Assembly: GCA_002269645.1 (NCBI GenBank)
Contig: NIVC01004412.1
Span: forward strand, 1 to 46,807
Reading direction: 5' to 3'
Origin: Macrostomum lignano
Taxonomy: Eukaryota
DNA: 46,807 nt
A model generated the notes under the pieces. That model was not told the DNA's origin, did not search any database, and saw only the letters and a list, made by a program, of their open reading frames with translations. Position 1 is the first letter of the stretch; each line of letters begins with the position of its first letter. Shown one piece after another: positions 1 to 42,083 of this stretch. The translations under genes and the position numbers were made by a program.

Positions 1-10
1 TTTTGCTCAG

Positions 11-102
11 CGTCTCGGCGTGCATCCTAAGCGCACGAGTTTCTCATTGCCGATGCTGCTAATAATATCTCCGGCGACGGAGGCGGCGCCTACCTCTGCC
101 AG
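11..102 (+). CDS. TRANK1: TRANK1-like, first visible exon
   Basis: Acceptor ctcag at 6-10, donor gtaacg at 103. 3' part reads [24 protein letters not shown] and joins PCEK of the next exon (CxxC). Needs one extra base near 31, or an alternative acceptor at 30-31. Confidence 0.5.
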
Positions 103-3100
103 GTAACGCTGACATATTGAGACTAGTTAAACGAAACTGGAAGAAGTTTTGGGGGTTAGAGGAAGCCGGAAGTAGTTTTGGTATAGACGGAACCGGAAGT
201 AGTTTTTGGATAAACGGAACTTAAAGTAGATTTGGATTTGGGGATAAGTAATTTTGGGATAGAGGAAACCGGGATAGTTTCGGGATAGACGGAACCGGAA
301 GTAGTTTTGGGATAGAAGAAACCGGAAGAAGTTTTTTTGAATAGACGGAACCGGAAGTAGTTTCGGGGTAGACGGAACCGGAAGTAGTTTTAGGATAGAA
401 GAAACCGGAAGTAGTTTCGGGATAGACGGAACCGGAAGTAGTTTTGGGATAGAAGAAACCGGAAGAAGTTTTTTTGGATAGACGGAACCGGAAGTAGTTT
501 CGGGGTAGACGGAACCGGAAGTAGTTTCGGCATAGACGGAACCGGAAGTAGTTTTGGGATAGAAGAAACCGGAATAAATTTTGGGATAGACGGAACCAGA
601 AAAAATCCGCTTATTTCTGCAGCCGTGCGAGAAAAGCCTGGAGAAGCATCGCAACTTATCAAAGCGCGAAGAATTGCTGCGCTTTTTCGGCGCCCTGCTG
701 CACGAGGATCACAAGCGGCAGTTCAGCAAGTCGCACGCCGACCTCATTGGCCGATTGCTGCCGGACCTGTTGGAGCTGTTGTCGCAGAGCGATCTCATCT
801 CGGCCAGGTTCATAACTGACCAGCTGCTGAGTCCGGCCGCTCTGCTGGCTTGTTTACTACACGGCCTCATCACCCTGGACACCAACACGGCCGAGGACGG
901 CACTTTTAAGTGTTGGAAGTCCATTCACGTGCTGCTGAAGTGTTATTTTGGCAGCGCCGCGTCGGCCAATCCGACACGAATTTGAAACCGACGCTGGAGC
1001 ACGGACTGCGGCTGTACCTGGGAGTGCACACCGTTGAGGCTGTGGTGGAGGACGCCAGGCGGGGCAATGTTGCCGCATCCGCCAGGCTGCAGGTGAGTGA
1101 AACTGGGGACTGAGATCGGTGAATTTAGTAACTGGGGTGTGTTGAGATTCTATTGTTAGTATGTGAAATTCTCTTATCAGGATGTGAGATTCTCTTATCA
1201 GGATGTGAGATTCTCTTATCAGGATGTGAGATTCTCTTATCAGGATGTGAGATTCTCTTATCAGGATGTGAGATTTCTTATCAGGATGTGAGATCCTCTT
1301 ATCAGGATGCGAGATTCTCTTATCAGGATGTGAGATCCTCTTATCAGGATGCGAGATTCTCTTATCAGGATGTGAGATTCTCTTATCAGGATGTGAGCTT
1401 CTGATTGATATGTAAGATTTTCTGAATTGAATAAGAGATTCCTAAGTAAGTGATATAAGATTATCTGGATACAATGGTCTAACAGTTGAGATTTTCGGGA
1501 TATAAAGCCTCCAATTCCTCCAAACCAGGACCTGCTCATGTCTGGCTACCAGCGCGGCGACCAGACCAAGCGATTGGAGCTGGTGGACCTGCTGAGGCGT
1601 GCCGGCGCCCTGTGCGACCTGTCCGGCATGGAGATGTCCGAGCTGTCCAGCCAGCAGCGCCAGGGCTTCGCTCGCGACCTGCCGCAGCTGATGCAGCGCG
1701 GCCTGCTCGGCCCCGACTGTCTTGGCGAAAATCCTCTGCACAAGGCGCTCATCGTTGCCCTGGACATTGAGCCCGGCTACTTTGAACTGTTCGAGCACCT
1801 GCTCGGCCTGTACAAATCGGACCCGGAGTCCCACCCGCAGCTGGACCCCTTTCTGCGCGACCGGGACGGCAACACTCTGTATCACACTGCCGCCGCCACC
1901 CGGAGCCGTCACTCCATTGAGGCTGTGCGCAAAATTGCCGAACTCACTGATGCTAATCCGAATCTGCGAAATAAGGCCAGGCAGACCGCTCTGCAGGTGA
2001 GCGAGACTGCTGGGATTTGTTATTATCCTCATTTATCCCCATTGATAAATCCAATGTAGATTATCCCAACGGATGAATCAAAGGATGATAACTATCAGTT
2101 GCTAAATCCCACCGATCAGGATCCCATTGTCCCCAATGATTTATCCCACCGGTCGGAATCCTCACATTATCCCCAATGGTTTTCCGGCCGATCGGAATCC
2201 TTATTATCCTCGAAGGTTTATCCCATCAATCGGGATACTCATCATCATCAATGATTTATCCACCGATTAAAATCACCATTATCCCTAATGATTTATCCCA
2301 CCGATCGGAATCCTCATTATCCCCAATGGTTTATCCGGCCGATCGAAATCCCCATTGTCCCCATTAGCTTATCCCCAAAAGCTTGCAATAGTTGTCTGTT
2401 TAGATAACCCGATGGCATTGGACACTGCTCTCTCGCTCCCCCCCCCCTCAAGGCTATCTGCCGGTCCGTCCGCCGCCGCGACCGCGCCCAGCTGGTGATG
2501 CAGCTGACCCAGGCGGCCGCCAGATTCCCCGAGCCGGAGCCCGTCGACTCCCGACCAGATTTTGGCGCCGACGATGACGCGTCTGGCGACGAGAGCGACG
2601 CTGACAGCGGCAGCGAGGCCTCCGGCTCCATAGCGTCGGGGTCTGGCAAGCCGTCAGTTGGCAGCGATCTACCGTTGACGTCGAAGCAGCAGAAGCAACT
2701 GCAGAAGCAACAACAACAGCAGCAGAAGCAGCTGGACGAAAGTTTGCAGCAGACGCCGCAGTCGCAGTTCGAGCAGACTCTGCAGTGGTTCCACCGCCAG
2801 CTGGACCGGCTCACCAAGGACGACATTGTCGATCGGACTCGGAATGCCGTGCGCGCGCCGAACCGCGCGACATCGCGCCGCCGGAAGAGTCGGACGCCGA
2901 GGAAGAAGAAGAGGACGAAGCCGACGAAGAGAAGGACATTGTTGGCGGCAATGATCGGCAGACGTCACCTACGGACGAAGTTGTTGGCAGCGACGACGAG
3001 GCTGACGTTGAGGCGAGCGCGCTGATGGTGCGCGATGGAGCTGAGCTCGACTGGGAGATCGAATGCACGGTGAGGCTGGGGATGGGATGGCAGAGTTGCT

Positions 3101-6100
3101 TAACGGAGTGTCCGATTCTTGTATTAAGTCCCGGGTTCGATTCAGCGCGCGGAAATCTGTCTACTAGTAGGACACACGAGGTCCAACCCTCAGGGCACAG
3201 AGTGCGTACTTTTCTTGCCTAGAGACTAGGAGAGAGGAAGAGAGGAGATTAGAGAGAAGAGCGCTGAGAAGAGATAGAAATTGAGCGGGCCGGATTGCTA
3301 TTGTGAAGTTTCAAAGGACCGAGGGCCGGATAGAGAGGCTTTGCGGGCTGCATGTGGCCGGAGTTTGCCTACCCCTGCTGTACATGTTCTGTGCTATTGC
3401 AGTACACTTGGTCACCTTGCAGCGGTTCTATGAACTCGTACATGTATGTCTAAATAATAATAATTGATTACGCCTGCCCCAATTGGGCCAGATGTGCAAC
3501 CGACAGCTCAGCCGCAGCTATTGCACGGCGCATCTGAAGGCTGCGTCCGGCTGTTCAGTCCAAGGACTGGGGGAGGGGGGTCGCCACACACAGCCTCAAT
3601 TACCCAGCTAATGCTGGTGCACACTCTACAGCTGGGTGAACTGAAACAATGCAGAGTTAAGTGTCTTGCTCAAGGCCACAAATTGTTCCAAGTAGATAGG
3701 GAATCGAACCCCCGACCTTTCAGTGGTGAGTCCGACGCTACAACCCCTTTTAATGCCTAATATGCCTACAGGTGGAACTATGGAACGCTCTTCGGCGCCG
3801 TCGGAACACGTGGCGCCAACTGAGGCGCCGATTGGCTAGGCGCCTATTAAAACTGGCCAGCGGGCGCGGCTGGCGCTCTCTGGCTAAGCCGGTCCGCCTG
3901 CCGGAGTCGGCCGCCGGTCTGGGCTTGCAGTTCTACCAGACCAGCCTGGGCGGCCAGGCCAGCCTGCTGTGGGAGCGGGCCGTCACCTTCAGCCCGAAGC
4001 GGTCCGGTCCGCAGGGCCGAATTTATTGCGACGTGCTGCGCCTGTGGGCCATCGTGGAATCCTCGGAAGCTCTAGCCGAGGAGATCACCAGGGCGATCAC
4101 CGCGCACAAGCGTGGCGCCGCCTGCGCGCTTGCCCGCGAGTTGAACTCCGCAGCCGCAGCCGCCTCGGCTTTAGCCAGCGACAACGCCGCTAATGCTGGT
4201 CGCATCCTGCCGCGCACCTACAGTGTCGTTTCTGGCGGTGGCGGCGGGTCCTCCGACCTCGTCCGTTTCCAGCCGCCTGGCGCCTCCAAGGAGACCGAGT
4301 ATCACATGATGAAGTTCTATAGCTGGGACGCCAGCCTCATTGCCGATATTCTCACTGGCGAGGCGAGAATTGATCTGCCGTTCCGTGTCACTGAGCAGGA
4401 GCACGCTATCATCGAGCTGAGCTCCGAGTCTCCAGTGCTGCTCATTGGTCGGAGCGGCACAGGCAAGACAACTTGCTGCGTGTTTAGAATGTTCTCCGAA
4501 TTTTCCAACTATTGGCTGCAGGTCCGCTCGGAGGCCAACCCGATTATCCCGCGGCGCCGCCTGTACAGACTGGTGCGTTTGAGAGCTTTTATCATCAGTC
4601 GATCAGTGGGTCATAGATCAGTCACCAGTGGGTCATAGATCAGTCATCAGTGGGTCATAGATCAGTCATCAGTGGGTCATAGATCAGTCATCAGTGGGTC
4701 ATAAAATGAGGGTCAGTCATCAGTGGGTCATAAAATGGGTCAGTCATCAGTGGGTCATAGAATGGGTCAGTCATCAGTTGGTCAAAAAAAGAGCCAGTCA
4801 TCAGTGGGTCATAAAATGAGCCAGTCATCAGTGGGTCATAAAATGAGCCAGTCATCAGTGGGTCATAGAATGGGCCAGTCATCAGTTGGTCATAGAATGG
4901 GTCAGTCATCAGTGGGTCATAGAATGGGTCAGTCATCAGTTGGTCATAGAATGGGTCAGTCATCAGTGGGTCATAGAATGGGTCAGTCATCAGTGGGTCA
5001 TAGAATGGGTAGGTGTTCAGTGAGCCATCGAGTGAGTGCCTCATTAGTAATAGAACGGGCAGTCAGCAGTGGGTCAGAATCAGAGGGTCAGTTAGCAGGT
5101 GGGTCATTCATCGATTGGGTCGGTCATTAGTAGGTCATTTGACTAGTCAGCAATATGTCATGGAGGGAGTCAGCAACAGTGGTTCAGTGGGATGTCTGAA
5201 AAATGATAAATCCTCGAAGGTTGTCGCCCTCGAACTATCAAAGGTCGATCCCGACGCCGCCGACGATGGCGCCCAGTCTGACGAGGACGCGGACGCCGCC
5301 GATGACGCTGGCGACGCGGCCGGCTGCGAGGCCGACCAGCGGCACAGAGGCCGGCACCGCGGCCGCGTCAGGAACCGGAATCGCACAACCAACAGCGATG
5401 CCACCGACACCTACGAAGAGGAGGCCGCCGCAGTCGCGTCTTCAGCCGTCGACGTCGGTTCCGACAATGAGGACGCGCCGGAGCCGCAGTTCGACCATCT
5501 TCGCCAGCTGTTCGTCACTAAAAACCCGGTGCTGTGCCGGGAGGTCCGCAAAAACTTCTACGATCTGTGCGCCGGCCTGCGGGACGCCGAGCTGCCGGAG
5601 CCGGAGTTCGAACTGCCAAACCGGCTGCAGGTGGCCAATTCCGGTCATTTCCCCATGTTTGTCAGCTCCAAGCAGCTGTGGATGCTGCTGGACGCCAGTC
5701 TGCCCGGTCAGCCGTTCTTTCAGCGCAACGAGGACGGCAGTCTGGCCAAGAAGGTGAGCGTTTTGGCAGCTTAGTATGACAGCTTCTGGTCATACTAAAT
5801 CATAGGTCATTTGGTCATAACTGAACTGAAGGTCATCTAGATTTGGTCATAACTGAACTGAAGGTCATCTAAATTTGGTCATATCTGAACTTGAAGGTCA
5901 TCTAGATTTGGTCATAACTAAACTGAAGGTCATCTAGATTTGGTCATATCTGAACTTGAAGGTCATCTAGATTTGGTCATAACTGAACTGAAGGTCATCT
6001 AGATTTGGTCATAACTGAACTGAAGGTCATCTAGATTTGGTCATAACTGAACTGAAGGTCATCTAGATTTGGTCATAACTAAGATGCTGTTCATTTGAAA

Positions 6101-9100
6101 CTGCGGGTCATTGAGTGCATCGGTCATATTGAAGTAGTGGTCATTTGATGGTTCGGTCATATTGAGATGGGGGAGGGAGTTATTTAGTAAATCGGTCATA
6201 CTAGATCAGAGGTCATTCTGTACATCGCTCATACTGTGCTCGCAATTTTCCACGCTCAGGTGCCGAGCTGGGAGGATGAGGAGGCGGACATCGAGTTCCT
6301 GCTGGACTCCACCGCCGACGATCTGTTTGACGCGGCCAACTACTACGATGACGGCAACGCCGATGGCGGCGGCGTCGAAGGCGGTGCCGACGTTGCCGGA
6401 GCGGGCGGCGCCAACGCGGATCAGCAGAATCCGGCGCCGCAGCAGCTGGAGGACAGGCGGCGCGAGGTCACCTACGAGTTGTTCTCAACCAGCCTGTGGG
6501 AGAAGCTGCCCAGCAAGCTGCGCTCGGGTCTGCAGCCCAGCCTGGTTTGGACAGAGCTGGTGTCCTTCATCAAAGGCTCTGTGGAGGCCTTGAACTCGCC
6601 AGGCGGCTTCCTGTCGCTGGCCAAGTACCGCGAGCTCGGCAAGAAACGCGCGCCCGAGTTTGCCGATTCGCGCGAACGAGTTTACCGACTGTTTGAAGAG
6701 TACCAGCGCCTGCTGCGTGACCTGGGACTGTTCGACATGAACGACTTGGTGGCCTGTCTGTACCGCCGCCAGACCGTCTGGCTGGCCGAGTCAGCCGCTC
6801 CGTCGCCCGAAGAGGACTGGGCTCTGCACGCGATCTTTGTTGACGAGACGCAGGACTTCACTCAGGCCGAGCTGAGCCTCCTGCTCCGCTGCTGCCAGGA
6901 CCCCAACAGGATGTTCTTCACCGGCGACACCGCGCAGAGCATCATGCGTGGCGTGTCGTTCCGATTCACCGACTTGAAGACTCTGTTCCATCACGCTAGG
7001 CGGGGCCTGCAGTCGCAGGGCGCCACCGGGGCGCTACGCATGCCGGACGGGCTGCAGGTGCTGACGCACAACTACAGAAGCCACTCGGGCATTCTGGGCC
7101 TGGCCTCCTGCGTTATCCTGCTGCTGGGCCGCCTGTTCCCCAGCACGTTCGACCCGCTTGAGCCGGACATGGGCCTGTTCCCCGGGCCCAAGCCCGTGCT
7201 TATTGAGTCCTGCTCTGCCACCGACTTGGCCTTCCTGCTGCAGGGCGCCAGGCGCAAGAGCAACGCGCACATCGACTTTGGCGCCCATCAGGCTATTATT
7301 GTGGCCAGCGATGAGGCCAGGCGCTATCTGGTTGAGAATGTGCCCGAGCTGTCCATCGCCCTGGTGCTCACCGTGTACGAGTCCAAAGGCCTCGAATTTG
7401 ATGACGTGCTGCTGTACAACTTCTTCAAGGACTCGCCCGCCAGTGAAAAGGTTAGATTAGATATTGTTCTCTACCTACGAAACACTTACTTACTCTCAAA
7501 GGTTTTCCTTCACTCATTGTAATCTATCCGCTCTACCCAAATAAGTCTACCCGCTCTACCCAAATTAGTCTACCCGCTCTACCTAAATTAGTCTACCCGC
7601 TCTACCTAATAAATCTACCCGCTCTACCAAATTAATCTACCCGCTCTAGCCAAATTAATTTACCCGCTCTACCCAAATAGGTCTACCCGCTCTACCCAAA
7701 TTAGTCTACCCGCTCTACCCAAATTAGTCTACCCGCTCTACCCAAATTAATCTACCCGCTCTAGCCAAATTAATTTACCCGCTCTACCCAAATAGGTCTA
7801 CCCGCTCTACCCAAAATTAGTCTACCCGCTCTACCCAAATTAATCTACCCGCTCTACCCAAATTAATCTACCCGCTCTAGCTAAATTAATGTACCCGCTC
7901 TACCCAAATAAATCTACCCGCTCTACCCAAATAAATCTACCCGCTCTACCTAATAAATCTACCCGCTCTACCCAATAAATCTATTTCCCACAACCCTTCA
8001 CAGGATTGGCGGGTTGCAAGCGCAGTTCTGCGCGACTTAGTCAGCGAGGCGGCCTCCACCAATGGAGCGGGCGGCAGCACCGCCGCTACGCCCGGCGCCC
8101 TGCTGAAGCAGCTGGACCTTGCAGAGTACGCCAAGCGGTCCAGCCGGCCAATTGAGTTCAGCGCCGGCGAGCACAAGATACTTAATAGCGTGCTCAAGCA
8201 CCTGTACACGGCGGTCACCAGGGCCAGAGTGAACGTGTGGATTTTTGACGAAGATGTTGAAGTTCGCAAGCCGATGTTTGAGTTCTTCAAAACTATGCAG
8301 GTTAGCTCCAGCCCGTATGTGCCTGCGCTCAGATAGGCTACAGAGGGGGCACAATCAGCTACAGAGGGGGGGGGGCACAACCAGCTACAGAGGGGGCACA
8401 ACCTGCTACAGAGGGTTCACAACCAGCTACAGAGGGGGCACATCCAGCTACGGAGGGGGCACAACCAGCTACGGAGGGGGGCACAATCAGCTACAGAGGG
8501 GGGGGCACAACCAGCTACAGAGGGGGCACAACCTGCTACAGAGGGTTCACAACCAGCTACAGAGGGGGCACATCCAGCTACGGAGGGGGCACAACCAGCT
8601 ACGGAGGGGGGCACAACCAGCTACAGAGGGGGCACAACCAGCTACAGAGGGTTCACAACCAGCTACAGAGGAGGGCACAACCAGCTACAGAGGGGGCACA
8701 ACCAGCTACAGAGGGGGCACAGCCTGCTACAGAGGGTTCACAACCAGCTACAGAGGAGGGCACAACCAGCTACAGAGGGGGCACAACCAGCTACAGAGGG
8801 GGCACAGCCTGCTACAGAGGGTTCACAACCAGCTACAGAGGAGGGCACAACCAGCTACAGAGGAGGGCACAACCAGCTACCGAGGCGCAAACTACAGAGG
8901 TCCCTGGGCTGGAAGCTGGCTACAACAACCAATTTGTCAGTGTAGTGTCCTTTACTCGGCCTGAAATTCTCTATTAAAAATACAATACACTTTGACGCCC
9001 ACCTCAAGGTCGTTAACGTGGTTGCCACGGGCAGCGAGTCGCTTGAGCTGTCGCTGGAATGCGCCGACGGTTTCGCCGCCACCTCCAGTCCGGAGCAGTG

Positions 9101-12100
9101 GCGCGCCAAAGGCCACGAGTTCTACTGCAGGCGCCTGTTCGACCTGGCCGCCAAGTGCTATAATCGGTCAGGCGACGCCGATCTCAAACAGCTGGCCGAA
9201 GCTAATGGCAAGGCTTTGCGGGCTCTGAAACTCACCGAGCCGAAGCAGCAGCGCGAGGATTTCGTATCGGCCGCTAGGATCTATTTGAAACTCGGCTGGA
9301 TTGAGCAGGCGGCCAAGTGTCTTGAGCACGGCCGGCAGCCTCTGCTAGCGGCAAACCTGTTCCAGCTGTTGGGCCAATATAACCGCGTGTTCAGGGTGAG
9401 CGCGTGCATGGTGTGATGTCTGCACTTTTAGATGTGTATGGCCTAACACCCATGATAGCTGATGATGATTCTGGTAGATAGCGGATGATGATTCTGGTAG
9501 ATATCGGATGATGATTCTGGTAGATAGCGGATGATGATTCTGGTAGATGGCGGGTGATGATTCTGCTAGATAGCGGGTGATGATTCTGGTAGATAGCGGG
9601 TGATGATTCTGCTAGATAGCGGGTGATGATTCGGGTAGATAGCGGGTGATGATTCGGGTAGATAGCGGGTGATGATTCTGGTAGATAGCGGATGATGATT
9701 CTGGTAGATATCGGATGATGATTCTGGTAGATAGCGGGTGATGATTCTGGTAGATAGCAGATGATGATTCTGGTAGATAGCGGGTGATGATTCTGGTAGA
9801 TAGCAGATGATGATTCTGGTAGATAGCGGGTGATGATTCTGGTAGCTAGCGGATGATGATTCTGGTAGATAGCGGGTGATGATTCTGGTAGATAGCGCGT
9901 GATGATTCTGGTAGATAGCGGGTGATGATTCTGGTAGATGGTAGGCGAAGATTCTGGTAGACAGTTGATCCTAATTTTTTAATCGATTCAATAATTTAAT
10001 TTCCCATTCGATGCGACACTGCAGGTGTTCGACAAGTCGCAGAACTACACCCGGGCAGCCGAGGCGCTGCAGTTGTCCGGCCGGGCCGCCCAAGCTGCCA
10101 AATACCTGCTGCAGCACCGGCTCTACATTGAGGCGTTCGAGGCCCGGCAGCAGGCCAAGCGGGAGGCCGAGCAGCACTGCGCCGGCGACGCCGCCCGTCT
10201 GGAGGCCGAGCTGGCCAGGCTGCCCGACGACAAAGTGATCCTGCTGCGCGGCGCCAAGGCCTACAAGCGGGAGAACAACAAAGAGAAACTGGAGAAGATG
10301 GTGCAGTCGCTGCCGCTGGAGGAGCGGGTCATGTTCTTTGTTGAGCACAAAGAGCTGCCGTCGGCTGCGGCGGCCTACGCTGCCGAGAATCAGAAGCGCG
10401 AAGCCGCCGTGTTTATGTACGACCACGGCTACATCAAGGAGGCCTGGAAGTACGCCTCCGAGGTAAATGCTGGAGAGGGGGAATTCACGATGCTACATGG
10501 TGGAGCATTCTCGATGCTGGAGGGTTGGGAAGTACGAGAAGTATGGGAAGTATGCTAGAGGGTGGGGTGGGGAATTCTCGATGCTGGAGAGTGGGGAATT
10601 CTCGATGCTAGAGGGTAGGGAATTCTCGATGCTGGATTTTGGGGAATTCTTGATGCTGGAGGGTGGGGAATTCTTGATGTTGCAGGATAGGGAATTCTCG
10701 ATACCGGAGAGTGGGGAATTACAGTGCTGGATAGTGGGGAGTTACAATGCTGGAGGGTGGGGTATTACAAAATGTTGGAAGGTGGGGAATTCTCGATACT
10801 GGAGGGTGGGGAATTCCGATTCTGAAGGGTGGGGAATTCTGATGCTGGATGGTGGTGAATTCTCGATGCTGGAGGGTGGGGAATTACAATGCTCGATAGT
10901 GGGGAGTTACAATGCTGGAGGGTGGGGAGTTACAATGCTGGAGGGTGGGGAGTTACAAAATGCTGGAGGGCATTGAATTACAAAATACTGGAGGGTGGGG
11001 AATTCTCGATACTGGAGGGTGGGGAATTCTCGATGCTGGATGGTGAGGAATTCTCGATGCTGGGGGTGGGGAATTCTCGATGGTGGGGGTGGGGAATTCT
11101 CGATGGTGGGGAATCCGATGCTGAAGGGTGGGGAATTCTGATGCTGGAGGGTGGGGAATTCTCGATGCTGGGGGTGGGGAATTCTCGATGGTGGGGAATC
11201 CGATGCTGAAGGGTGGGGAATTCTGATGCTGGAGGGTGGGGAATTCTCGATGCTGGGGGTGGGGAATTCTCTATACTGGAGGGTGGGAAATTCTAGATGC
11301 TAGAAGGTGGAGCATTCTGGATGCTACAAGGTGGGGAATTCTCGATGCTACAAGGTGGGGAATTCTCGATGCTACAAGGTGGGGAATTCTCGATGCTACA
11401 AGGTGGGGAATTCTTTATGCTGGAGGGTGGGGAATTCTCGATGCTACATGGTGGGGAATTCTTTATGCTGGAGGGTTGGGAATTCTCGATGCTACAAGGT
11501 GGGGAATTACAATGCTGGAGGGTGGGGAATTACAAAATGCTGGACGGTGGTTCATTCAGCCGAGCCGTTTGCACTCCCGCAGGCCGACGATGAGCAGCTT
11601 CTATCGCAGTGCGCCACAGCTCTGGCTGAGAAGGCTTACTCGCACTGGGATAGAAAGCGGAACCAGGAGGCTCAAGACAAGGCCCGGGAGGCTCTGCGGA
11701 CGGCCGTCGGCAAGGCCGAGCTGGTGGCCGCTCACCAGGACGCCGCCTATTGCCGACTTCTGCTGGGCGACGCGACCCGGGACATCCGGTGCCTGCAGCA
11801 GGCCTTCGTGCAGATGCGCCAGATGAACTGCGAGATCGGCCTGGTGTTCATCTTGAATATCGTCTGCCAGGACAGCAGCATCCTCGGCGAGGATCCGGCC
11901 ACTCGGTCCGTGTGGATGCGCGAGCTGCTGCTGCCGCTGCGGATGCTGGGCGAACTCATCATCAATTTCAGTGATCGCTGCAAAAACCCCAACCTTAGCG
12001 TCATCCAGCGCACCTATCGCTTCCTGGGGCTCACTGAGAAGTCCCGCCTCATGGACCTGCAGCTGCGGCCTGCCGGCTACCCGCAGGCCAGGCGGCTGCT

Positions 12101-12173
12101 CTCTCTTGCCGGCCGGCCGCAAAAAATAAATAGTGTGGCCAGATCCGTAAGTGCCTGACTGGCTCACTCACTA

Positions 12174-12258
<85 letters not shown>

Positions 12259-12263
12259 TAGTC

Positions 12264-12318
<55 letters not shown>

Positions 12319-12323
12319 TAGTC

Positions 12324-12368
<45 letters not shown>

Positions 12369-12523
12369 CTAAGACAGACAGACAGACAGACAGACACTAA
12401 GACACTAAGACACTAAGACATACACACAGACAGACAGACAGACAGACACACTAAGACAGACAGACAGACATACAGACACTTAAGACAGACAGACAGACAG
12501 ACAGACAGACATACAGACACTTA

Positions 12524-12576
<53 letters not shown>

Positions 12577-12754
12577 CTAAGACAGACACTAAGACAGACA
12601 GACACACTAAGACACTAAGACAGACAGACAGACAGCCAGACAGACAGACAGACAGACACACTAAGACAGACAGACAGACACTAAGACAGACAGACATACA
12701 GACACTTAAGACAGGCAGACAGACAGACAGACAGATAGACAGACAGACAGAGAC

Positions 12755-12851
<97 letters not shown>

Positions 12852-12928
12852 CTAAGACAGACAGACACTAAGACAAACAGACAGACAGACAGACACTAAG
12901 ACACTAAGACAGACAGACAGACACACTA

Positions 12929-12984
<56 letters not shown>

Positions 12985-12988
12985 TCGC

Positions 12989-13021
<33 letters not shown>

Positions 13022-13054
13022 CTAAGACACTAAGACAGACAGACAGACACACTA

Positions 13055-13090
<36 letters not shown>

Positions 13091-13154
13091 TCGCAGACAG
13101 ACAGACAGACAGACAGACAGACACTAAGACAGACAGACAGACAGACAGACACTA

Positions 13155-13202
<48 letters not shown>

Positions 13203-13206
13203 TCGC

Positions 13207-13243
<37 letters not shown>

Positions 13244-13288
13244 CTAAGACAGACAGACAGACAGACACTAAGACAGACAGACAGAGAC

Positions 13289-13339
<51 letters not shown>

Positions 13340-13366
13340 TAGATAGACAGACAGACAGACAGAGAC

Positions 13367-13397
<31 letters not shown>

Positions 13398-13400
13398 GAC

Positions 13401-13435
<35 letters not shown>

Positions 13436-15782
13436 TAGATAGACACTAAGACAGACAGACAGACAGACAGTTTTAATCAATTTGTCGTGTCAATCGAGGT
13501 CAGTCCGTTTGGTTAATGGTTGGGCAGCTTTACTACATCTTATCTAGCGGTAGATACACAGTCAATCAGTCCATCTCCTTCCCCGCAATTGTCCGCACGC
13601 CAGGAGGTGAACAGCAGCGTGTCAATGTTCTGCGAGAATCTCATCAGCGATGCCCTGCCTCTGCTGTTCATGTTCCTGAAAGAGGACGCCCTGAGCCGAG
13701 CCTACTGCCCCAGCCAGTGCCAGGGTGACAACGCCTGCTCCAAGGCGCTGAGCATCGAGGTCAGCTCGAATCAGTGCGCCTACAAGCACGGCGGCAGATA
13801 CGAGACACCCGAGGAGTTCCGCGACATGGCCATGGCGGCCGGCTACCTGCTGCGCTTCGGCCGTCTGCTGCACCAGCACAGCATGAGCCGGTCCAACCGG
13901 CTGCGCGACGACTCCCAGCGGGCCACCGCCACCCGCAACTATGTGCAGCGCATGGAGGGCCGCTTCAAGTACAACGATTACGTCATCATGTACATCTCCA
14001 ATGTCTACCCGGCCAGGCCGCTGTACGAAACCCGACATCCGGTGATTCTGCCGGCTATCGGCGAGTTCCTAGTAGACATGGACTACTTCTGCGACAATCA
14101 TCTGCCGTCCGGCTACGGGGACCGGCTTTTCAAACTGCGCGACAGCCTCATCAACCGGAGCCAGCGAGCCGCCGCCGTTGCCGCTCAGGCCGCCCGGCAG
14201 CCGGCGCTGGAGCCGGACAGCCTGCCGGAGAAGCTGCGGCCATTTGTGCCGACTGAAGATTACTGCGGCATCTGCGGCATGCAGCTGCTGCGCGACGAGG
14301 ACGTCGAACTGGACCTGCCGCAGGCGTCTACCGGCTTCGGCTTGCAGGTAGGCTGGTTCTGTTGGCTGATCAGAGGGGGGGCACTGCAGATACGCCATTT
14401 GTGAGCCTCTAGCGACTAGGATTCCCGGTTGTCGCCCAGGGTCCCGGGTTCGACTCTTGGTCAGGACCGGTGTGAGCTCCTATCGGTTAGAATTTCATTT
14501 AGAGGACCCGGGTTCGAATCCCGGTCAGGGAACCGGTGTGAGCTCCTATCGGTTAGAATTTCATTTAGAAGACCCGGGTTCGAATCCCGGTCAGGGAACC
14601 GGTGTGAGCTCCTATTGGTTAGAATTTCATTTAGACGACCCGGGTTCGAATCCCGTTTTGGGAACCGGTGTGAGCTCCTATTGGTTAGAATTTCATTTAG
14701 AGGACCCGAGTTCGAATCCCGTTCTGGGAACCAGTGTGAGCTCCCATCGGTTAGAATCCCTGCTTTTCAAACCTGTCCCCAGATTCAGGAGTCGAACCTG
14801 AGCACGCTCAGTCGCTCGCTCACCCACAATACCGCTGTTATTGGTGAAGCCAGTGTGCAAGTGGCATGCCTTGTATTTATTGCGCCCTACCTGACCCCCG
14901 CGTCCGCAGGTCAAACTGCCATCGGTGTCCGCCCACCTGTCCTCGGATAATCACCTGCAACGCCTGAACGCATTCAAACGATTTTCCACCTTCATCGCGG
15001 ACTTCCTGGACAAGCAGCGGCACTGGGAGGCAAAAATTGACGAGATTGAGCAAATCTTGAAGACCAGGTCCGGTGTCGGCGAAGTTAGCGACGACGGCCG
15101 CGAAGGCGAAGGTGGTGGCGGTGGCGGAGGCGACGTCCTGCTAGAAGTTCTGCAGACGCGCCGAACCCAGCTAAAGTCGGACATCGACCGACTGGACAAG
15201 ACAATCGACACTGACATCGACAAGCTGGTGTGGGAGCGCTTCAACGTGCACAACAGGAGCCTCGGCCAGTTGAAGGGCAAATTTCACGAAAAGTTCGTTC
15301 GCTACTTTGCTCAACACTTGCCGAAGAATTTCAGCTTCAGCCAGCAGGGCTTTGCCGCTCCTCCAGAGGCTGCCCAGCAGCAGGCGGCTGGCGTTGGCGC
15401 CGTACCGCAAGGCCCCGGCGCGCAGCAGCAGCAGCAGGGCGCCACATTTGAAGACGACGACATGTCGCTGCAATTCGATGCCGACTATTACGACAACAAG
15501 TCATTCCACGGTGTCAAGGACGAATTTACGGAAGTTGTGCGTAACCGGAACCGCAACCGGAACCAACAGCATCGGTTTCAGCGGAGGAACAACTACGGCG
15601 GCGGAGGAGGAGGCGGCGGCGGCGGCGGCGGCGGTCGAAGATTCCCTGCTGGCGGAGGCGTAGGCGGTCGATCTGGAAGATACGGCGGCGGCGGTGGCGG
15701 CGGCGGTGGCGGAGGACCGCGCACTTTTCACAACAGCAATCGAGAACTGCCGCCAAGATTTCGCAAAGCGCAAGGCCAATAA
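11..15782 (+). CDS. TRANK1: TRANK1-like (TPR and ankyrin repeat protein 1 / LBA1): ankyrin repeats + UvrD-like SF1 helicase + TPR region; 13 exons, 5'-incomplete, about 2,490 aa in window
   Basis: Exons 11-102, 623-1092, 1529-1996, 2453-3069, 3772-4572, ~5220-5753, 6260-7450, 8004-8300, 9009-9395, 10025-10462, 11583-12146, 13604-14347, 14910-15782, all bounded by AG/GT and joining in frame after three 1-nt corrections. Motifs: WEIECT, Walker [82 protein letters not shown], recognised as TRANK1-family sequence. Confidence 0.9.
130..600. repeat. 27-bp minisatellite (TRANK1 intron 1)
   Basis: Unit approx gggatagacggaaccggaagtagtttt. Confidence 0.9.
623..1092 (+). CDS. TRANK1: TRANK1-like exon 2 (contains frameshift near 973)
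   Basis: ttatttctgcag acceptor, gtgagt donor at 1093. 470 nt = 471-1; frame of ORF 674-985 switches to frame of ORF 910-1113. Confidence 0.75.
1164..1400. repeat. 21-bp minisatellite (intron 2)
   Basis: Unit caggatgtgagattctcttat, about 11 copies. Confidence 0.92.
1529..1996 (+). CDS. TRANK1: TRANK1-like exon 3, ankyrin repeats
   Basis: ccag/gac acceptor, cag/gtgagc donor. [21 protein letters not shown] and [15 protein letters not shown] are ankyrin-type motifs. Confidence 0.85.
2030..2395. repeat. Degenerate tandem repeat (intron 3)
   Basis: Recurrent ttatccc...cgatcggaatcctcattatcccc. Confidence 0.6.
2453..3069 (+). CDS. TRANK1: TRANK1-like exon 4 (acidic and Gln-rich; frameshift near 2835-2862)
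   Basis: Polypyrimidine tract + aag acceptor, acg/gtgagg donor. 617 nt = 618-1; ends in the conserved LDWEIECT. Confidence 0.8.
3452..3750 (-). mobile_element. tRNA-derived SINE with MetaSINE-like core, in TRANK1 intron 4
   Basis: Minus strand: B-box GGTTCGATTCC (about 3704-3714), core gtggccttgagcaagacacttaactctgcattg...cagttcacccagctgta, and (TTA)n tail near 3452-3463. 5' head truncated. Confidence 0.65.
3772..4572 (+). CDS. TRANK1: TRANK1-like exon 5, Walker A of SF1 helicase
   Basis: cctacag acceptor, ctg/gtgcgt donor. GRSGTGKTT from 4447; MMKFY and IDLPFRVT segments. Confidence 0.9.
4600..5005. repeat. 22/27-bp minisatellite (intron 5)
   Basis: Core cagtcatcagtgggtcata. Confidence 0.9.
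5220..5753 (+). CDS. TRANK1: TRANK1-like exon 6 (alternative in-frame start at 5244)
   Basis: [14 protein letters not shown]...[19 protein letters not shown]...[10 protein letters not shown]; donor aag/gtgagc. Two in-frame AG acceptors are possible. Confidence 0.85.
5805..6080. repeat. 32-bp minisatellite (intron 6)
   Basis: Unit aactgaactgaaggtcatctagatttggtcat. Confidence 0.9.
6260..7450 (+). CDS. TRANK1: TRANK1-like exon 7, helicase motifs II-V
   Basis: ctcag acceptor, aag/gttaga donor. [27 protein letters not shown]. Confidence 0.92.
7523..7985. repeat. 23-bp minisatellite (intron 7)
   Basis: Unit tctacccgctctacccaaattag, about 20 copies. Confidence 0.92.
8004..8300 (+). CDS. TRANK1: TRANK1-like exon 8, helicase motif VI (not in ORF track)
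   Basis: ttcacag acceptor, cag/gttagc donor. 99 codons: [11 protein letters not shown]...[20 protein letters not shown]...[10 protein letters not shown]. Confidence 0.9.
8330..8900. repeat. 21-24-bp minisatellite (intron 8)
   Basis: Unit approx cacaaccagctacagaggggg. Confidence 0.92.
9009..9395 (+). CDS. TRANK1: TRANK1-like exon 9, TPR-like
   Basis: ctcaag acceptor, agg/gtgagc donor. [11 protein letters not shown]...AAKCY...AAKCLE TPR-like helices. Confidence 0.88.
9455..9960. repeat. 23-bp minisatellite (intron 9)
   Basis: Unit gatgattctggtagatagcgggt. Confidence 0.92.
10025..10462 (+). CDS. TRANK1: TRANK1-like exon 10, TPR-like
   Basis: ctgcag acceptor, gag/gtaaat donor; in-frame helical sequence with GC-rich codon usage. 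Confidence 0.85.
10465..11545. repeat. 24-bp G-rich minisatellite (intron 10)
   Basis: Unit atgctggagggtggggaattctcg. Confidence 0.92.
11583..12146 (+). CDS. TRANK1: TRANK1-like exon 11
   Basis: ctcccgcag acceptor, tcc/gtaagt donor; in frame. Confidence 0.82.
12172..13470. repeat. (CAGA)n microsatellite with CACTAAGA interruptions (intron 11)
   Basis: Directly visible, about 1.3 kb. Confidence 0.95.
13604..14347 (+). CDS. TRANK1: TRANK1-like exon 12 (includes YCGICG)
   Basis: cgccag acceptor, cag/gtaggc donor; in frame. Confidence 0.8.
14405..14760 (+). repeat. 66-bp tRNA-Glu-like tandem array (intron 12)
   Basis: About 5 units, each with ggttagaatt...cccgggttcgaatcccggtcagggaa; B-box motifs near 14447, 14511, 14577, 14643, 14709. 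Confidence 0.75.
14910..15782 (+). CDS. TRANK1: TRANK1-like terminal exon with Gly/Arg-rich low-complexity tail
   Basis: tccgcag acceptor, stop TAA 15780-15782. AATAAA at 15778-15783 overlaps the stop; another AATAAA at 16707-16712. Confidence 0.8.
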   Translation, partial: VKLPSVSAHLSSDNHLQRLNAFKRFSTFIADFLDKQRHWEAKIDEIEQILKTRSGVGEVSDDGREGEGGGGGGGDVLLEVLQTRRTQLKSDIDRLDKTIDTDIDKLVWERFNVHNRSLGQLKGKFHEKFVRYFAQHLPKNFSFSQQGFAAPPEAAQQQAAGVGAVPQGPGAQQQQQGATFEDDDMSLQFDADYYDNKSFHGVKDEFTEVVRNRNRNRNQQHRFQRRNNYGGGGGGGGGGGGGRRFPAGGGVGGRSGRYGGGGGGGGGGGPRTFHNSNRELPPRFRKAQGQ

Positions 15783-16084: not shown

Positions 16085-16143
16085 CAGATTGTCTGTCTCA
16101 GTGTCTGTCTATCTGTCTGTCTGTCTTAGTGTCTGTCTTAGTT

Positions 16144-16198
<55 letters not shown>

Positions 16199-16302
16199 TG
16201 TCTGTCTGTCTTGGTCTCTGTCTCAGTGTCTGTCTGTCTGTCTGTCTGTCTTGTCTGTCTGTCTCAAGTGTCTGTCTATCTGTCTGTCTGTCTGTATGTC
16301 TC

Positions 16303-16337
<35 letters not shown>

Positions 16338-16340
16338 TAG

Positions 16341-16383
<43 letters not shown>

Positions 16384-16390
16384 ATGTCTC

Positions 16391-16421
<31 letters not shown>

Positions 16422-16424
16422 TAG

Positions 16425-16469
<45 letters not shown>

Positions 16470-16554
16470 TGTCTGTCTGTCTGTCTTGTCTGTCTGTCTT
16501 GGTCTCTGTCTCAGTGTCTGTCTGTCTTGTCTGTCTGTCTCAAGTGTCTGTCTA

Positions 16555-16597
<43 letters not shown>

Positions 16598-16600
16598 TAG

Positions 16601-16633
<33 letters not shown>

Positions 16634-16660
16634 TAGCGTCTGTCTGTTTGTCTGTCTGTC
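16085..16660. repeat. (TCTG)n microsatellite, reverse orientation of the CAGA family
   Basis: Contains TCTTAGTG, the reverse complement of CACTAAGA. Confidence 0.95.
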
Positions 16661-17304
16661 TTTCTCCGCCCGGCTGTCTCTTTCCTACTTGCCTGCTATC
16701 AATTCCAATAAATCTTTTTGACCTTCGTTGCAGACAGAATGAGTTTTGATTTCTCATCCGCTTTTTTCTATTTTAAACTTCTAGCTACTAGCTAGAAACA
16801 AAAGAGAAACAAAAGCAATGAAAGGGCAGCTGGTCGAGGCCCGGCTGTGCACTGCACCGGCAGTCTGAGTGGCCTCAACAAAGTTGCATAGTCGTCACGA
16901 TTCAATGTAAATATTTTCAGCTAATTGTTAATCTTTTAGCGTGTAATTAATTATCTTAGCGTTTATACGTTTAAATCGGTGCCAAGATTATGGTGAAGCT
17001 TATGCTAAAATGCCGATGCTGCTCTGCCTCTCATTCATTCATTTCCCAACTGTACTCTCATTTTTTCCGGTGTTTTCGCTCGTTGGTTTTTTGTGTTTCG
17101 CTCACTGTTGCGGTCCAACGTTGAATACCCCCTTCCCATTGAAGTTGTGCGCTAATTTCAATAAATAATATTTTTGTCTGGCTGGCTTGGCGTCAGGCTG
17201 ACTCGGCTGTAATAATCTCTTGTTTAATCCCTGTGCAGACCGCCGCTCTCTGACTCGCTTTTTCTATTGGACTAATCATGGGGCACGCACGCTTTCCTCT
17301 TTTG

Positions 17305-17925: not shown

Positions 17926-18300
17926 TACCACAGCAGCGTGAACTGGTGTACTCGCTCACTTTATGAGTGTCATTGACCTTTGAAATAAAAAGTTAATGCC
18001 TGCGTTGCTCCGTCCCTGTGCAGCAAAAAATCGTCGGGGGGGTTGGCGTAAATCTCCCCCTTGTAGTTTTGTTAATCAGCCCTCCCGTTCCTTGCTTTAC
18101 CTCTGCAAAACTAAAAAGACTTGTCTATGGCGGAACCAACCCTTCTACATGTAGTTCTTTCTAGCTGAAATAAACTTTTGAGCTCAAAGCGTTCGTCGAG
18201 GAAGATTCGTGCTCGGGGAATTTCCATTTCCATCGGCAACGGAGTTCGAACGAAGCAGCTCGGTGGAACCAGAGCTGAGCGGCTGTTTGAAGCAGCTGGA

Positions 18301-23965: not shown

Positions 23966-23969
<4 letters not shown>

Positions 23970-24025
<56 letters not shown>

Positions 24026-24044
24026 CACAGACAGACAGACACTA

Positions 24045-24081
<37 letters not shown>

Positions 24082-24106
24082 CACAGACAGACAGACACTA
24101 AGACAC

Positions 24107-24177
<71 letters not shown>

Positions 24178-24189
24178 TACAAGACACTA

Positions 24190-24233
<44 letters not shown>

Positions 24234-24285
24234 TCTAAGACAGACAAACAGACAGACAGACACTAAGACACTAAGACACTAATAC

Positions 24286-24325
<40 letters not shown>

Positions 24326-24330
24326 GGACA
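23970..24330. repeat. (CAGA)n microsatellite with CACTAAGA interruptions
   Basis: Directly visible. Confidence 0.95.
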
Positions 24331-24645
24331 GACGTTGTGCTTTGCATTAACCTGCAATTTTGTCTGGGTTCAGGTATCTTAGAAAAAACAGAGCTCGAAA
24401 TTTAACGCAGTTTGTGTGCCAATTTCTATTCGAAATTGTCAGCGACGCACTGAAAAGCATTTAGCAATATTCGAGATGCTTACATTTTACTTTATTGAAT
24501 CCGAGAAAAATTTATTGTCTTTATTCAACAGCCAAATATTTTCGTTCTTGAAGTGCGAAGTATAGTTCGGAAATGTCAGACCATTTTTTCTTCTCTTGTA
24601 GGACTTGGCATTTTAGCTCGTAATTAATGCTCTGACCAGCTCGTG

Positions 24646-41996: not shown

Positions 41997-42064
<68 letters not shown>

Positions 42065-42083
42065 AGAGAGAGGGAGAGAGAGA

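What the first reader, a model, noticed from the sequence alone, without database searches (positions are those of the whole stretch)
103..14909. All 12 TRANK1 introns are phase 0 and sit at proto-splice sites
Seen: every junction falls between codons (cag|ccg, cag|gac, cag|gct, acg|gtg, ctg|gtt, aag|gtg, aag|gat, cag|gtc, agg|gtg, gag|gcc, tcc|gag, cag|gtc). Eleven of 12 upstream exons end in G (8 in AG) and 11 of 12 downstream exons start with G. Both Ly6 introns are also phase 0, whereas BUB1 shows 2,2,0,2. Established: phase 0 is normally about half of animal introns, and the (C/A)AG|G context is associated with intron gain. Inference: lineage-specific mass intron gain, or selection for fully modular in-frame exon skipping. 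The first four junction phases depend on the frameshift corrections.
Basis: partly seen in the sequence, partly recalled or inferred. Interest (0 to 1): 0.7.

Follow-up and report, generated by a model that had tools for sequence, protein, structure and literature searches.

The report
Twelve phase-0 introns in flatworm TRANK1
A flatworm TRANK1-like helicase gene really does have all 12 visible introns lying between codons, but this is mostly what young introns at AG|G sites in a GC-rich coding sequence give, plus some luck, so it is a modest curiosity.

Summary
For every intron the best splice pair is phase 0, and codon usage supports the reading frame on both sides of each one.

Caveats:
- There is no cDNA.
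- The I5 acceptor is ambiguous, though it is phase 0 in all top models.
- Exons 2 and 4 each carry an apparent one-base frameshift.
- The window cuts the gene's 5' end, so at least one more splice of unknown phase lies upstream.

No intron position is exactly shared with seven orthologous loci (coral, oyster, sea spider and four unnamed eukaryotes).
- I3, I4, I8, I10 and, on a weak alignment, I11 fall inside uninterrupted exons of every alignable relative.
- I7 and I9 sit 4 and 6 codons downstream of two old, widely conserved phase-0 introns whose own sites are unoccupied here.
- I6 is 2 codons from an oyster intron.

So lineage-specific intron turnover is supported. Selection for exon skipping has no support.

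In this coding sequence 67% of AG|G sites are already phase 0. Conditioning on each junction's own context gives P(12/12) of about 0.001. Other genes in the window show mixed phases. This is ordinary biology with a mildly unusual outcome.

The parts
31..102 (+). Exon 1 (partial; the gene continues upstream of the window)
   Evidence: The frame is open from the TAA at 28-30 to the donor. There is no in-frame ATG. Codon-usage score is +12.1 against -9.5 and -30.3 for the other frames.
103..622 (+). Intron 1, phase 0, CAG|GTAACG...CTGCAG|CCG; 27-bp tandem array at 131-601
623..1092 (+). Exon 2 (470 nt = 3n+2; frame switches at about 940-965)
1093..1528 (+). Intron 2, phase 0, CAG|GTGAGT...AACCAG|GAC; 21-bp array at 1143-1402
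1529..1996 (+). Exon 3 (ankyrin-like region)
   Evidence: Weak Ank and Ank_2 hits below Pfam's cut-off. Aligns to L001.
1997..2452 (+). Intron 3, phase 0, CAG|GTGAGC...CTCAAG|GCT; 38-bp array at 2106-2374
   Evidence: The site is uninterrupted in L001 and L002.
2453..3069 (+). Exon 4 (617 nt = 3n+2; frame switches at about 2845-2865; ends in the conserved motif DWEIECT)
3070..3771 (+). Intron 4, phase 0, ACG|GTGAGG...CTACAG|GTG; the only intron without a tandem array
   Evidence: WE(V/I)(E/D)CT|x is uninterrupted in L001, L002, L003, L004, L005 and L007.
3772..4572 (+). Exon 5 (P-loop GRSGTGKTT)
4573..5219 (+). Intron 5, phase 0, CTG|GTGCGT...; acceptor ambiguous (5150, 5219 or 5243, all phase 0); 27-bp array at 4594-5010
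5220..5753 (+). Exon 6 (acidic linker, then the conserved block [10 protein letters not shown]...LDASLPG)
5754..6259 (+). Intron 6, phase 0, AAG|GTGAGC...GCTCAG|GTG; 32-bp array at 5809-6080
   Evidence: The site is uninterrupted in L001-L004 and L007. The oyster has a phase-0 intron 2 codons upstream.
6260..7450 (+). Exon 7 (UvrD-helicase core, 397 aa)
   Evidence: PF00580 E = 1.3e-8; 176 homologues
7451..8003 (+). Intron 7, phase 0, AAG|GTTAGA...TCACAG|GAT; 23-bp array at 7520-7983; 4 codons downstream of the old FFKDSQ| intron
8004..8300 (+). Exon 8 (UvrD_C_2-like block [18 protein letters not shown])
8301..9008 (+). Intron 8, phase 0, CAG|GTTAGC...CTCAAG|GTC; 21-bp array at 8337-8885
   Evidence: The site is uninterrupted in all seven loci.
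9009..9395 (+). Exon 9
9396..10024 (+). Intron 9, phase 0, AGG|GTGAGC...CTGCAG|GTG; 23-bp array at 9454-9961; 6 codons downstream of the old G(K/Q)| intron
10025..10462 (+). Exon 10
10463..11582 (+). Intron 10, phase 0, GAG|GTAAAT...CCGCAG|GCC; 24-bp array at 10467-11550, starting 4 nt after the donor GT
   Evidence: The site is uninterrupted in L004 and in L002 and L003.
11583..12146 (+). Exon 11
   Evidence: Codon score +134; almost no detectable homologues.
12147..13603 (+). Intron 11, phase 0, TCC|GTAAGT...CGCCAG|GAG; (AGAC)n at 12176-13470
   Evidence: The aligned region is uninterrupted in L002-L004, but identity is only 13-22%.
13604..14347 (+). Exon 12
   Evidence: Codon score +243.
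14348..14909 (+). Intron 12, phase 0, CAG|GTAGGC...CCGCAG|GTC; 66-bp array at 14443-14798
   Evidence: Only 4 frame-preserving pairs exist and all are phase 0.
14910..15782 (+). Exon 13, with stop TAA at 15780-15782

Best explanation
This is a real, spliced TRANK1-like gene (ankyrin region, UvrD-type SF1 helicase, divergent C-terminal region) in a free-living flatworm related to Macrostomum. Its exon-intron structure has been largely rebuilt in its own lineage.

At least five introns (I3, I4, I8, I10, probably I11) sit where all sampled orthologues have continuous exons. Two others (I7, I9) replace old, widely conserved phase-0 introns and lie 12 and 18 nt downstream of them. These are 'near intron pairs', meaning intron relocation, or loss followed by a nearby gain.

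New introns are fixed preferentially at (C/A)AG|G(T) sites. In this GC3-rich coding sequence such sites are mostly an NAG codon followed by a GNN codon, which is phase 0. The all-phase-0 pattern is therefore mainly a by-product of codon usage and protosplice preference, plus two inherited phase-0 introns, plus roughly 1-in-100 to 1-in-1000 luck. It is not a designed or selected property.

Shown: the junctions, the frames, the lack of shared positions, and the phase distribution of AG|G sites. Inferred: that the unshared introns are gains rather than repeated losses elsewhere, that I7 and I9 are relocations, and that the phase pattern has no function.
For: - All 12 introns are GT-AG and the best junction for each is phase 0.
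- Frames are confirmed by codon usage.
- Exact exon maps of annotated relatives give mixed phases: oyster 1,0,2,0,2,0,1 and sea spider 0,1. Phase 0 is therefore not a family trait.
- Junction-spanning alignments are continuous in relatives at I3 (L001), I4 (6 loci), I6 (5 loci), I8 (7 loci) and I10 (L004).
- L002 has single open frames of 1089 aa and about 1000 aa covering our E3-E7 and the C-terminal region.
- The old phase-0 intron CAG|GT...AG|GCN at FFKDSQ|A is present in 7 loci, and the one at G(K/Q)|(F/Y) in 4 loci. Both sites are uninterrupted here.
- 91 of 135 AG|G sites in the coding sequence are phase 0.
- The context-conditioned probability of 12/12 is 1e-4 to 1.4e-3.
- Other introns in the window are 0,0,2,0,2 and none has an AG|G junction.
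- Published background: phase-0 excess, the (A/C)AG||Gt protosplice consensus and stronger exonic signal at new introns (PMC3488318); near intron pairs less than 32 nt apart arising by intron migration or tandem duplication (PMC2891723).
Against: - There is no cDNA, so every junction is a prediction.
- After conditioning on junction context the pattern is still nominally unlikely (about 1e-3), so a phase-biased process is not excluded.
- The species tree of the unnamed relatives (L001-L004) is unknown, so 'gain here' rather than 'several losses elsewhere' rests on parsimony across a coral, an oyster, a sea spider and four unnamed eukaryotes.
- No flatworm TRANK1 orthologue could be examined.
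- I1, I2 and I12 could not be compared, because the C-terminal half has almost no detectable homologues.
Confidence: 0.55

Rival explanations
1. A burst of intron gain by a mechanism that targets AG|GT sites and is itself biased to phase 0. Candidates are reverse splicing of excised introns into nearby mRNA sites followed by recombination, or staggered-break repair. The phase monopoly would then be a direct signature of the mechanism.
For: - Six of 12 downstream exons start with GT, although only 4.8% of codons in this gene do (p about 9e-6).
- Eight of 12 junctions are AG|G, against 0 of 5 in the other genes of the window.
- The residual probability after conditioning on context is about 1e-3.
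- I7 and I9 look like an old intron removed and an intron reappearing 12-18 nt away, which is what reverse splicing predicts.
Against: - The introns share no sequence with one another.
- Intron ends show no similarity to the flanking exons.
- Matches between the two ends of an intron do not go beyond the ordinary AG|GT consensus.
- GT enrichment at +1/+2 is part of the known protosplice consensus (PMC3488318).
- The sample is one gene.
Confidence: 0.2
2. Model artefact. Some of the predicted junctions are wrong because they were chosen by reading open frames, and the true set of phases is mixed.
For: - There is no transcript evidence.
- The I5 acceptor is ambiguous, and the I1, I8 and I11 splice scores are low.
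- Two unexplained frameshifts show that the sequence or the model is imperfect.
- An unseen upstream splice could be phase 1.
Against: - For every intron, alternatives in phase 1 or 2 that keep both frames open score lower. For I3 and I12 none exist, and only one or two do for I2 and I7.
- Frames on both sides are fixed by codon usage.
- For I4-I9, frames are also fixed by homology running right up to the junction.
Confidence: 0.12
3. The introns are old and were lost independently in all the relatives examined. TRANK1 would then have started with many phase-0 introns.
For: - The two demonstrably old introns of the family are both phase 0.
- Relatives differ a great deal from one another in intron positions, so loss is common in this family.
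Against: - None of the 12 positions is shared exactly with a coral, an oyster, a sea spider or four other eukaryotes.
- I4 and I8 would need six or seven absences.
- Strong exonic AG|G(T) context is the published mark of young rather than old introns (PMC3488318).
Confidence: 0.08
4. Selection for fully modular, in-frame exon skipping. All internal exons are kept symmetric (0-0) so that any of them can be skipped without breaking the frame.
For: Nine of 11 internal exons are multiples of 3 in length. The other two are 3n+2 only because of the apparent one-base frameshifts.
Against: - The window contains no evidence of alternative splicing.
- Several exons carry parts of the helicase core (P-loop in E5, motifs in E7 and E8). 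Skipping them would destroy the enzyme.
- The pattern is largely accounted for without selection.
Confidence: 0.05

Closest known systems
Protosplice-site model of intron gain and the general phase-0 excess (Dibb and Newman; reviewed in Rogozin et al. 2012, PMC3488318)
   Same: Junctions are (C/A)AG|G(T) in 7-8 of 12 cases. The introns are lineage-specific with strong exonic signal. Phase-0 excess follows the phase distribution of AG|G sites in the coding sequence.
   Different: Here the excess is total (12/12), while the AG|G sites themselves predict about two thirds. The review itself notes that protosplice sites alone do not fully explain phase-0 excess.
Near intron pairs, intron migration (Lehmann et al. 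2010, Drosophila, PMC2891723)
   Same: An old conserved intron position is empty and a novel one lies less than 32 nt away. I7 is 12 nt and I9 is 18 nt from their old partners. I6 is 6 nt from an oyster intron. The coding sequence between the two positions is retained.
   Different: This is a different phylum and the comparisons are deep rather than between sister species. The direction and timing of the move cannot be shown, and no trace of tandem duplication was found.
Introner elements, transposon-borne introns (Micromonas, Aureococcus, dinoflagellates and others)
   Same: Many introns have apparently been added to one gene in one lineage.
   Different: The 12 introns have no sequence similarity to each other and no shared termini. 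Each carries its own private tandem array.
TRANK1 (TPR and ankyrin repeat-containing protein 1) family
   Same: UvrD-type helicase core, P-loop, the WE(V/I)ECT, FFKDS and LYTA(V/I)TRARVNVW motifs, an ankyrin-like N-terminal region, and best named hits TRANK1-like.
   Different: The C-terminal ~500 residues tested (exons 11-13) have almost no detectable relatives, even in a search of 1.84 billion proteins. Compared with L002-L004, about 400 residues are missing between the C..Y.H and CGICG motifs (read by eye). The gene has two apparent frameshifts.

Membership tests
TRANK1 family (identity of the gene) | UvrD/SF1 helicase core with a Walker A P-loop | tested here: met
   PF00580 E = 1.3e-8, above Pfam's cut-off. 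GRSGTGKTT is in exon 5.
TRANK1 family (identity of the gene) | Best named homologues are TRANK1 or TRANK1-like | tested here: met
   Gigantopelta, Saccostrea, Haliotis, Pycnogonum and Desmophyllum TRANK1(-like) at 44-52% identity over exon 7.
TRANK1 family (identity of the gene) | N-terminal ankyrin repeats | tested here: inconclusive
   Ank E = 0.0012 and Ank_2 E = 0.0088, both below the curated cut-offs.
TRANK1 family (identity of the gene) | TPR region after the helicase | tested here: inconclusive
   No Pfam TPR hit in exons 9-11. These exons align only weakly to the TPR-like region of relatives.
Recently gained introns at protosplice sites | Exonic context (C/A)AG|G | tested here: met
   Eight of 12 are AG|G, 7 of 12 are (C/A)AG|G and 6 of 12 have |GT. 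All are well above the codon-frequency expectation.
Recently gained introns at protosplice sites | Position absent from orthologues of other lineages | tested here: met
   Met for I3, I4, I8 and I10, and weakly for I11. Not testable for I1, I2 and I12.
Recently gained introns at protosplice sites | Presence/absence difference between close relatives or within the species | not testable with these tools
   No close relative of the source genome could be reached.
Near intron pairs (intron migration) | Old conserved position empty and novel position less than 32 nt away in the same gene | tested here: met
   FFKDSQ|A is phase 0 in 7 loci; here the sequence reads [10 protein letters not shown]|DW. 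G(K/Q)|(F/Y) is phase 0 in 4 loci; here it reads GQYNRVFR|VF.
Introner elements | Introns are copies of one repeat family with shared ends | tested here: not met
   All-against-all blastn of the 12 introns gave no cross-hit at E < 1e-3.
Introns made by tandem duplication of an AGGT-containing exon segment | The intron's 5' end resembles the start of the next exon, or its 3' end resembles the end of the previous exon | tested here: not met
   Local alignment z-scores were -1.3 to +1.6 for all 24 comparisons.

The most novel reading that the evidence does not exclude
A free-living flatworm lineage has undergone a recent burst of intron gain and relocation. The process inserts at AG|GT sites and lands between codons more often than the available sites predict. 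The new introns were later inflated by private minisatellites. TRANK1 would then be a caught-in-the-act example and an entry point to the mechanism of intron gain in animals.
Probability: 0.15. Interest if true: 0.6.

Novelty: new member of a known kind. Interest (0 to 1): 0.3.

Why it matters
Clear cases of animal genes whose intron set was largely rebuilt in one lineage are scarce, and they are the raw material for working out how introns are gained. This gene offers several candidate young introns, plus two apparent relocations of old introns, in one locus.

It is also a worked example of how codon usage alone pushes new introns into phase 0. A striking 12/12 should therefore not be read as selection without a genome-wide control.

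If the genome-wide control showed phase 0 among new introns well above the phase-0 share of AG|G sites, the finding would become more interesting.

Tried and rejected
- **C-terminal homologue search.** A search with exons 8-13 found only one weak hit, from a pelagophyte.
- **Exhaustive HMMER search.** Exons 11-13 against 1.84 billion representative proteins gave one hit at E = 1.3e-5 over 40 residues. The conservation of I11 and I12 therefore rests on a weak MAFFT alignment, and I12 is unresolved.
- **HMM from relatives.** A model built from the three large 3' exons of relatives, searched against the six-frame translation of the window, gave significant hits only to exon 10 (full-sequence E = 7.6e-05); everything else had E > 1.
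- **Introner hypothesis.** Rejected, because the introns share no similarity.
- **Tandem-duplication origin.** Rejected, because intron ends do not resemble the flanking exons.
- **Phase 0 as a TRANK1 family trait.** Rejected. The oyster paralogue has phases 1,0,2,0,2,0,1.
- **Micro-introns to explain the two frameshifts.** In exon 2 a 26-nt GT-AG piece (929-954, phase 0) would restore the frame, but it is very short. In exon 4 no candidate has a credible splice consensus, so a one-base indel in the GC-repeat around 2850-2865 is more likely.
- **Reaching the source genome or its upstream sequence.** Exact-protein look-ups failed twice.
- **Synteny with Macrostomum lignano.** Within 10 kb of the M. 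lignano Band-7 orthologue there is no TRANK1, BUB1 or Ly6.
- **Identifying assembly GCA_029979725.** A paper search for this accession, the source of the closest relative L001, found nothing.
Full report
**What the region is.** Window 31-15782 (+ strand) holds a large split gene. Stop-free frames with strong GC3 codon bias alternate with repeat-filled spacers. The central exons carry a UvrD-type helicase core (PF00580, E = 1.3e-8), a P-loop (GRSGTGKTT) and weak ankyrin hits upstream. Exon 7 finds 176 homologues, and the named ones are 'TPR and ankyrin repeat-containing protein 1(-like)' from molluscs, a sea spider and a coral, at 44-57% identity. The single-exon Band-7/stomatin gene at 37457-38746 has its best full-length matches in Macrostomum lignano (66-68%), followed by many other flatworms. 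The source is thus a flatworm, but not M. lignano itself.

**Gene model.** I rebuilt 13 exons and 12 introns (coordinates are in 'parts'). All introns are GT-AG, with donors such as GTGAGC, GTGAGT and GTAAGT. Acceptors are CAG nine times and AAG three times.

I enumerated every GT/GC...AG pair that keeps both flanking frames open and scored each with a generic splice matrix. The best pair is phase 0 for all 12 introns. For I3 and I12 no phase-1 or phase-2 solution exists at all, and I2 and I7 have only two and six respectively, all low-scoring. I5 is the one soft spot. It lies in a hypervariable acidic linker, and acceptors at 5150, 5219 and 5243 are all possible, but each is phase 0.

A codon-usage log-odds test trained on the conserved exons supports the assumed frame in every exon. 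This includes the 24-codon exon 1 and the segments after the two frame switches. Because phase depends only on the local frame at each splice site, the 'frameshift corrections' do not really affect the phases.

**Flaws in the model.**
- Exons 2 and 4 are the only internal exons whose length is 3n+2. Sliding-window codon scores place the frame switches at about 940-965 and about 2845-2865. Each needs one extra base.
- In exon 2 a 26-nt GT-AG piece (929-954, also phase 0) would repair the frame.
- In exon 4 nothing looks like an intron, and a one-base indel in a GC repeat is the simpler reading.
- Exon 1 has no in-frame ATG and an in-frame stop at 28-30. The gene therefore starts upstream of the window, and at least one more splice, of unknown phase, exists.
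- No transcript data were available.

**Is 12/12 more than chance?**
- At 50% phase 0 the probability is 2.4e-4.
- This coding sequence is GC3-rich. AG|G sites are mostly an NAG codon followed by a GNN codon, and 91 of 135 such sites (67%) are in phase 0. That gives 0.67^12 = 0.008.
- Conditioning each junction on its own exonic context gives 1e-4 to 1.4e-3.
- The other introns I could model in the window are Ly6-like 0,0 and BUB1 2,0,2. The genome is therefore not all phase 0, but the direct comparison is weak (Fisher p = 0.07).
- The pattern is nominally unlikely, but it is the sort of thing a scan of many genes will occasionally turn up.

**Exonic context.** Eleven of 12 junctions have G at -1, 8 of 12 have AG, 11 of 12 have G at +1, and 6 of 12 have GT at +1/+2. 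All are far above the codon-position frequencies of this gene. They match the published (A/C)AG||Gt protosplice consensus and the published observation that new introns carry more signal in the exon flanks (PMC3488318). None of the five junctions in the neighbouring genes is AG|G.

**Are the positions old or new?** I fetched seven orthologous loci:
- L001, the closest relative at 57%, from an unnamed NCBI assembly.
- L002, a TARA metagenome scaffold.
- L003, an unnamed contig.
- L004, probably a stony coral, because its product closely resembles the Desmophyllum protein (by eye).
- L005, the oyster Saccostrea echinata.
- L006, the sea spider Pycnogonum litorale.
- L007, the coral Desmophyllum pertusum.

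For the three annotated proteins I mapped the protein exactly back onto its own DNA. This gives exact intron positions and phases: oyster 1,0,2,0,2,0,1; sea spider 0,1; coral 1,1, where the two coral 'introns' are tiny. Phase 0 is therefore not a family trait.

Alignments spanning the junctions, together with the open-frame structure of the loci, show the following:
- **I3:** site continuous in L001 and L002.
- **I4 (WEIECT|VELW):** continuous in six loci.
- **I5:** continuous in L002-L004. L001 and the oyster have introns 10-14 codons away, and the oyster's is phase 1.
- **I6:** continuous in five loci. The oyster has a phase-0 intron two codons upstream.
- **I8:** continuous in all seven loci.
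- **I10:** continuous in L004, and also in L002 and L003 by alignment.
- **I11:** continuous in L002-L004, but on an alignment of only 13-22% identity.
- **I1, I2, I12:** not assessable.

L002 covers our exons 3-7 with one 1089-aa open frame, and the C-terminal region with another of about 1000 aa. This gene therefore has roughly three times the intron density of that relative over the same stretch.

**Two relocated old introns.** An intron at FFKDSQ|A (CAG|GT...AG|GCN, phase 0) is present in all seven loci. One at ...G(K/Q)|(F/Y) (phase 0) is present in L001-L004. In the window gene both sites are uninterrupted (…[10 protein letters not shown]|DWRV… and …[10 protein letters not shown]|VFDK…). 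I7 and I9 lie 4 and 6 codons downstream, after residues that still resemble the start of the relatives' downstream exon. These fit the definition of near intron pairs, in which an old and a novel position lie less than 32 nt apart and the old one is empty. In Drosophila such pairs have been attributed to intron migration or tandem duplication (PMC2891723). Two independent random gains falling that close to the two conserved sites would be unlikely, about 0.3% by my rough count. I therefore read I7 and I9 as relocations of old phase-0 introns.

**Mechanism checks.** The 12 introns share no sequence with each other, so they are not introner-type elements. Intron ends do not resemble the flanking exons, so no trace of tandem-duplication origin remains. 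Eleven of the 12 introns consist mostly of one private tandem array (5945 of 8296 intron nucleotides). The Ly6-like and BUB1 introns have private arrays too, so this is a property of the genome and not of young introns. M. lignano is reported to have 15% simple and tandem repeats (PMC5730564).

**Verdict.** 'Mass gain' at genome scale cannot be judged from one window, and 'selection for in-frame exon skipping' is unsupported and unnecessary.

The most likely account is protosplice-site-biased intron turnover in a GC3-rich gene, two inherited phase-0 introns, and some luck. A truly phase-biased gain mechanism remains possible, at about 0.15-0.2, and would be the interesting outcome. It needs a genome-wide comparison of new-intron phases with AG|G site phases, plus cDNA.

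Noticed in passing
window 131-601, 1143-1402, 2106-2374, 4594-5010, 5809-6080, 7520-7983, 8337-8885, 9454-9961, 10467-11550, 12176-13470, 14443-14798; also 18513-19005, 19875-20451, 39850-40430: Almost every intron in the window, in TRANK1, the Ly6-like gene and BUB1, is filled by its own private tandem array (periods 4-66 bp). Some arrays start within 4-60 nt of the donor. In TRANK1, 72% of intron sequence is tandem repeat. Only intron 4 has none.
   Followed up: partly
window about 940-965 and about 2845-2865: There are two apparent one-base frameshifts in TRANK1 exons 2 and 4; both exons are 3n+2 long. They could be assembly indels, a young pseudogene, or, for exon 2, a 26-nt GT-AG micro-intron at 929-954.
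   Followed up: partly
window 1-102: Exon 1 has no in-frame ATG and an in-frame TAA at 28-30, so the gene is cut by the window edge. Candidate acceptors are at 30-31 (which would be phase 1) or 38-39 (phase 0). Many Macrostomum genes are trans-spliced (PMC5730564), so this could be a spliced-leader acceptor.
   Followed up: no
window 7433-7450 / 8004-8015 and 9375-9395 / 10025-10036: The sites of two old, widely conserved phase-0 introns (FFKDSQ|A and GK|F) are uninterrupted here. The gene's own introns 7 and 9 lie 12 and 18 nt downstream, forming near intron pairs.
   Followed up: yes
window 37457-38746 (+): An intronless Band-7/stomatin-like gene of 429 aa. Its best full-length hits are Macrostomum lignano at 66-68%, then trematodes and cestodes. 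This places the window in a flatworm other than M. lignano.
   Followed up: yes
window 28952-29383 and 29713-30144: A head-to-head inverted duplicate, 432 nt and 99% complementary, of a LINE-like apurinic endonuclease open frame (weak PF03372 hit). More diverged arms lie further out (28204-28345 / 30264-30405).
   Followed up: partly
window 24881-27105: A 42-bp unit repeated 53 times at 99% identity. Its period is a multiple of 3, so it is open in several frames on both strands, giving mechanical ORFs of 566-793 aa. Probably not a gene.
   Followed up: no
window 12176-13470, 16090-16665, 23969-24333, 44653-44909, 45730-46164: The same (AGAC)n/(TGTC)n microsatellite recurs five times on either strand across the window, including inside TRANK1 intron 11 and the large BUB1 intron.
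   Followed up: no
window 18300-20806 (+): A Ly6/uPAR-like three-finger gene with three coding exons. It has a signal peptide, two cysteine-rich domains and a hydrophobic tail. There is no Pfam hit. Both introns are phase 0, with non-AG|G junctions (TTG|ACG, CCG|TTT).
   Followed up: partly
window 39724-46463 (+): The BUB1 N-terminus (Mad3_BUB1_I, PF08311), with introns in phase 2, 0, 2 and GA|GTGAGT donors. One intron is 5.6 kb long and holds several different tandem arrays. The gene runs off the window end.
   Followed up: partly
window 11583-15779: The ~500 residues tested from TRANK1 exons 11-13 have strong coding signal but essentially no detectable homologue among 1.84 billion representative proteins. 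Compared with relatives, about 400 residues appear to be missing between the C..Y.H and CGICG motifs. The protein ends in a Gly/Arg-rich tail.
   Followed up: partly
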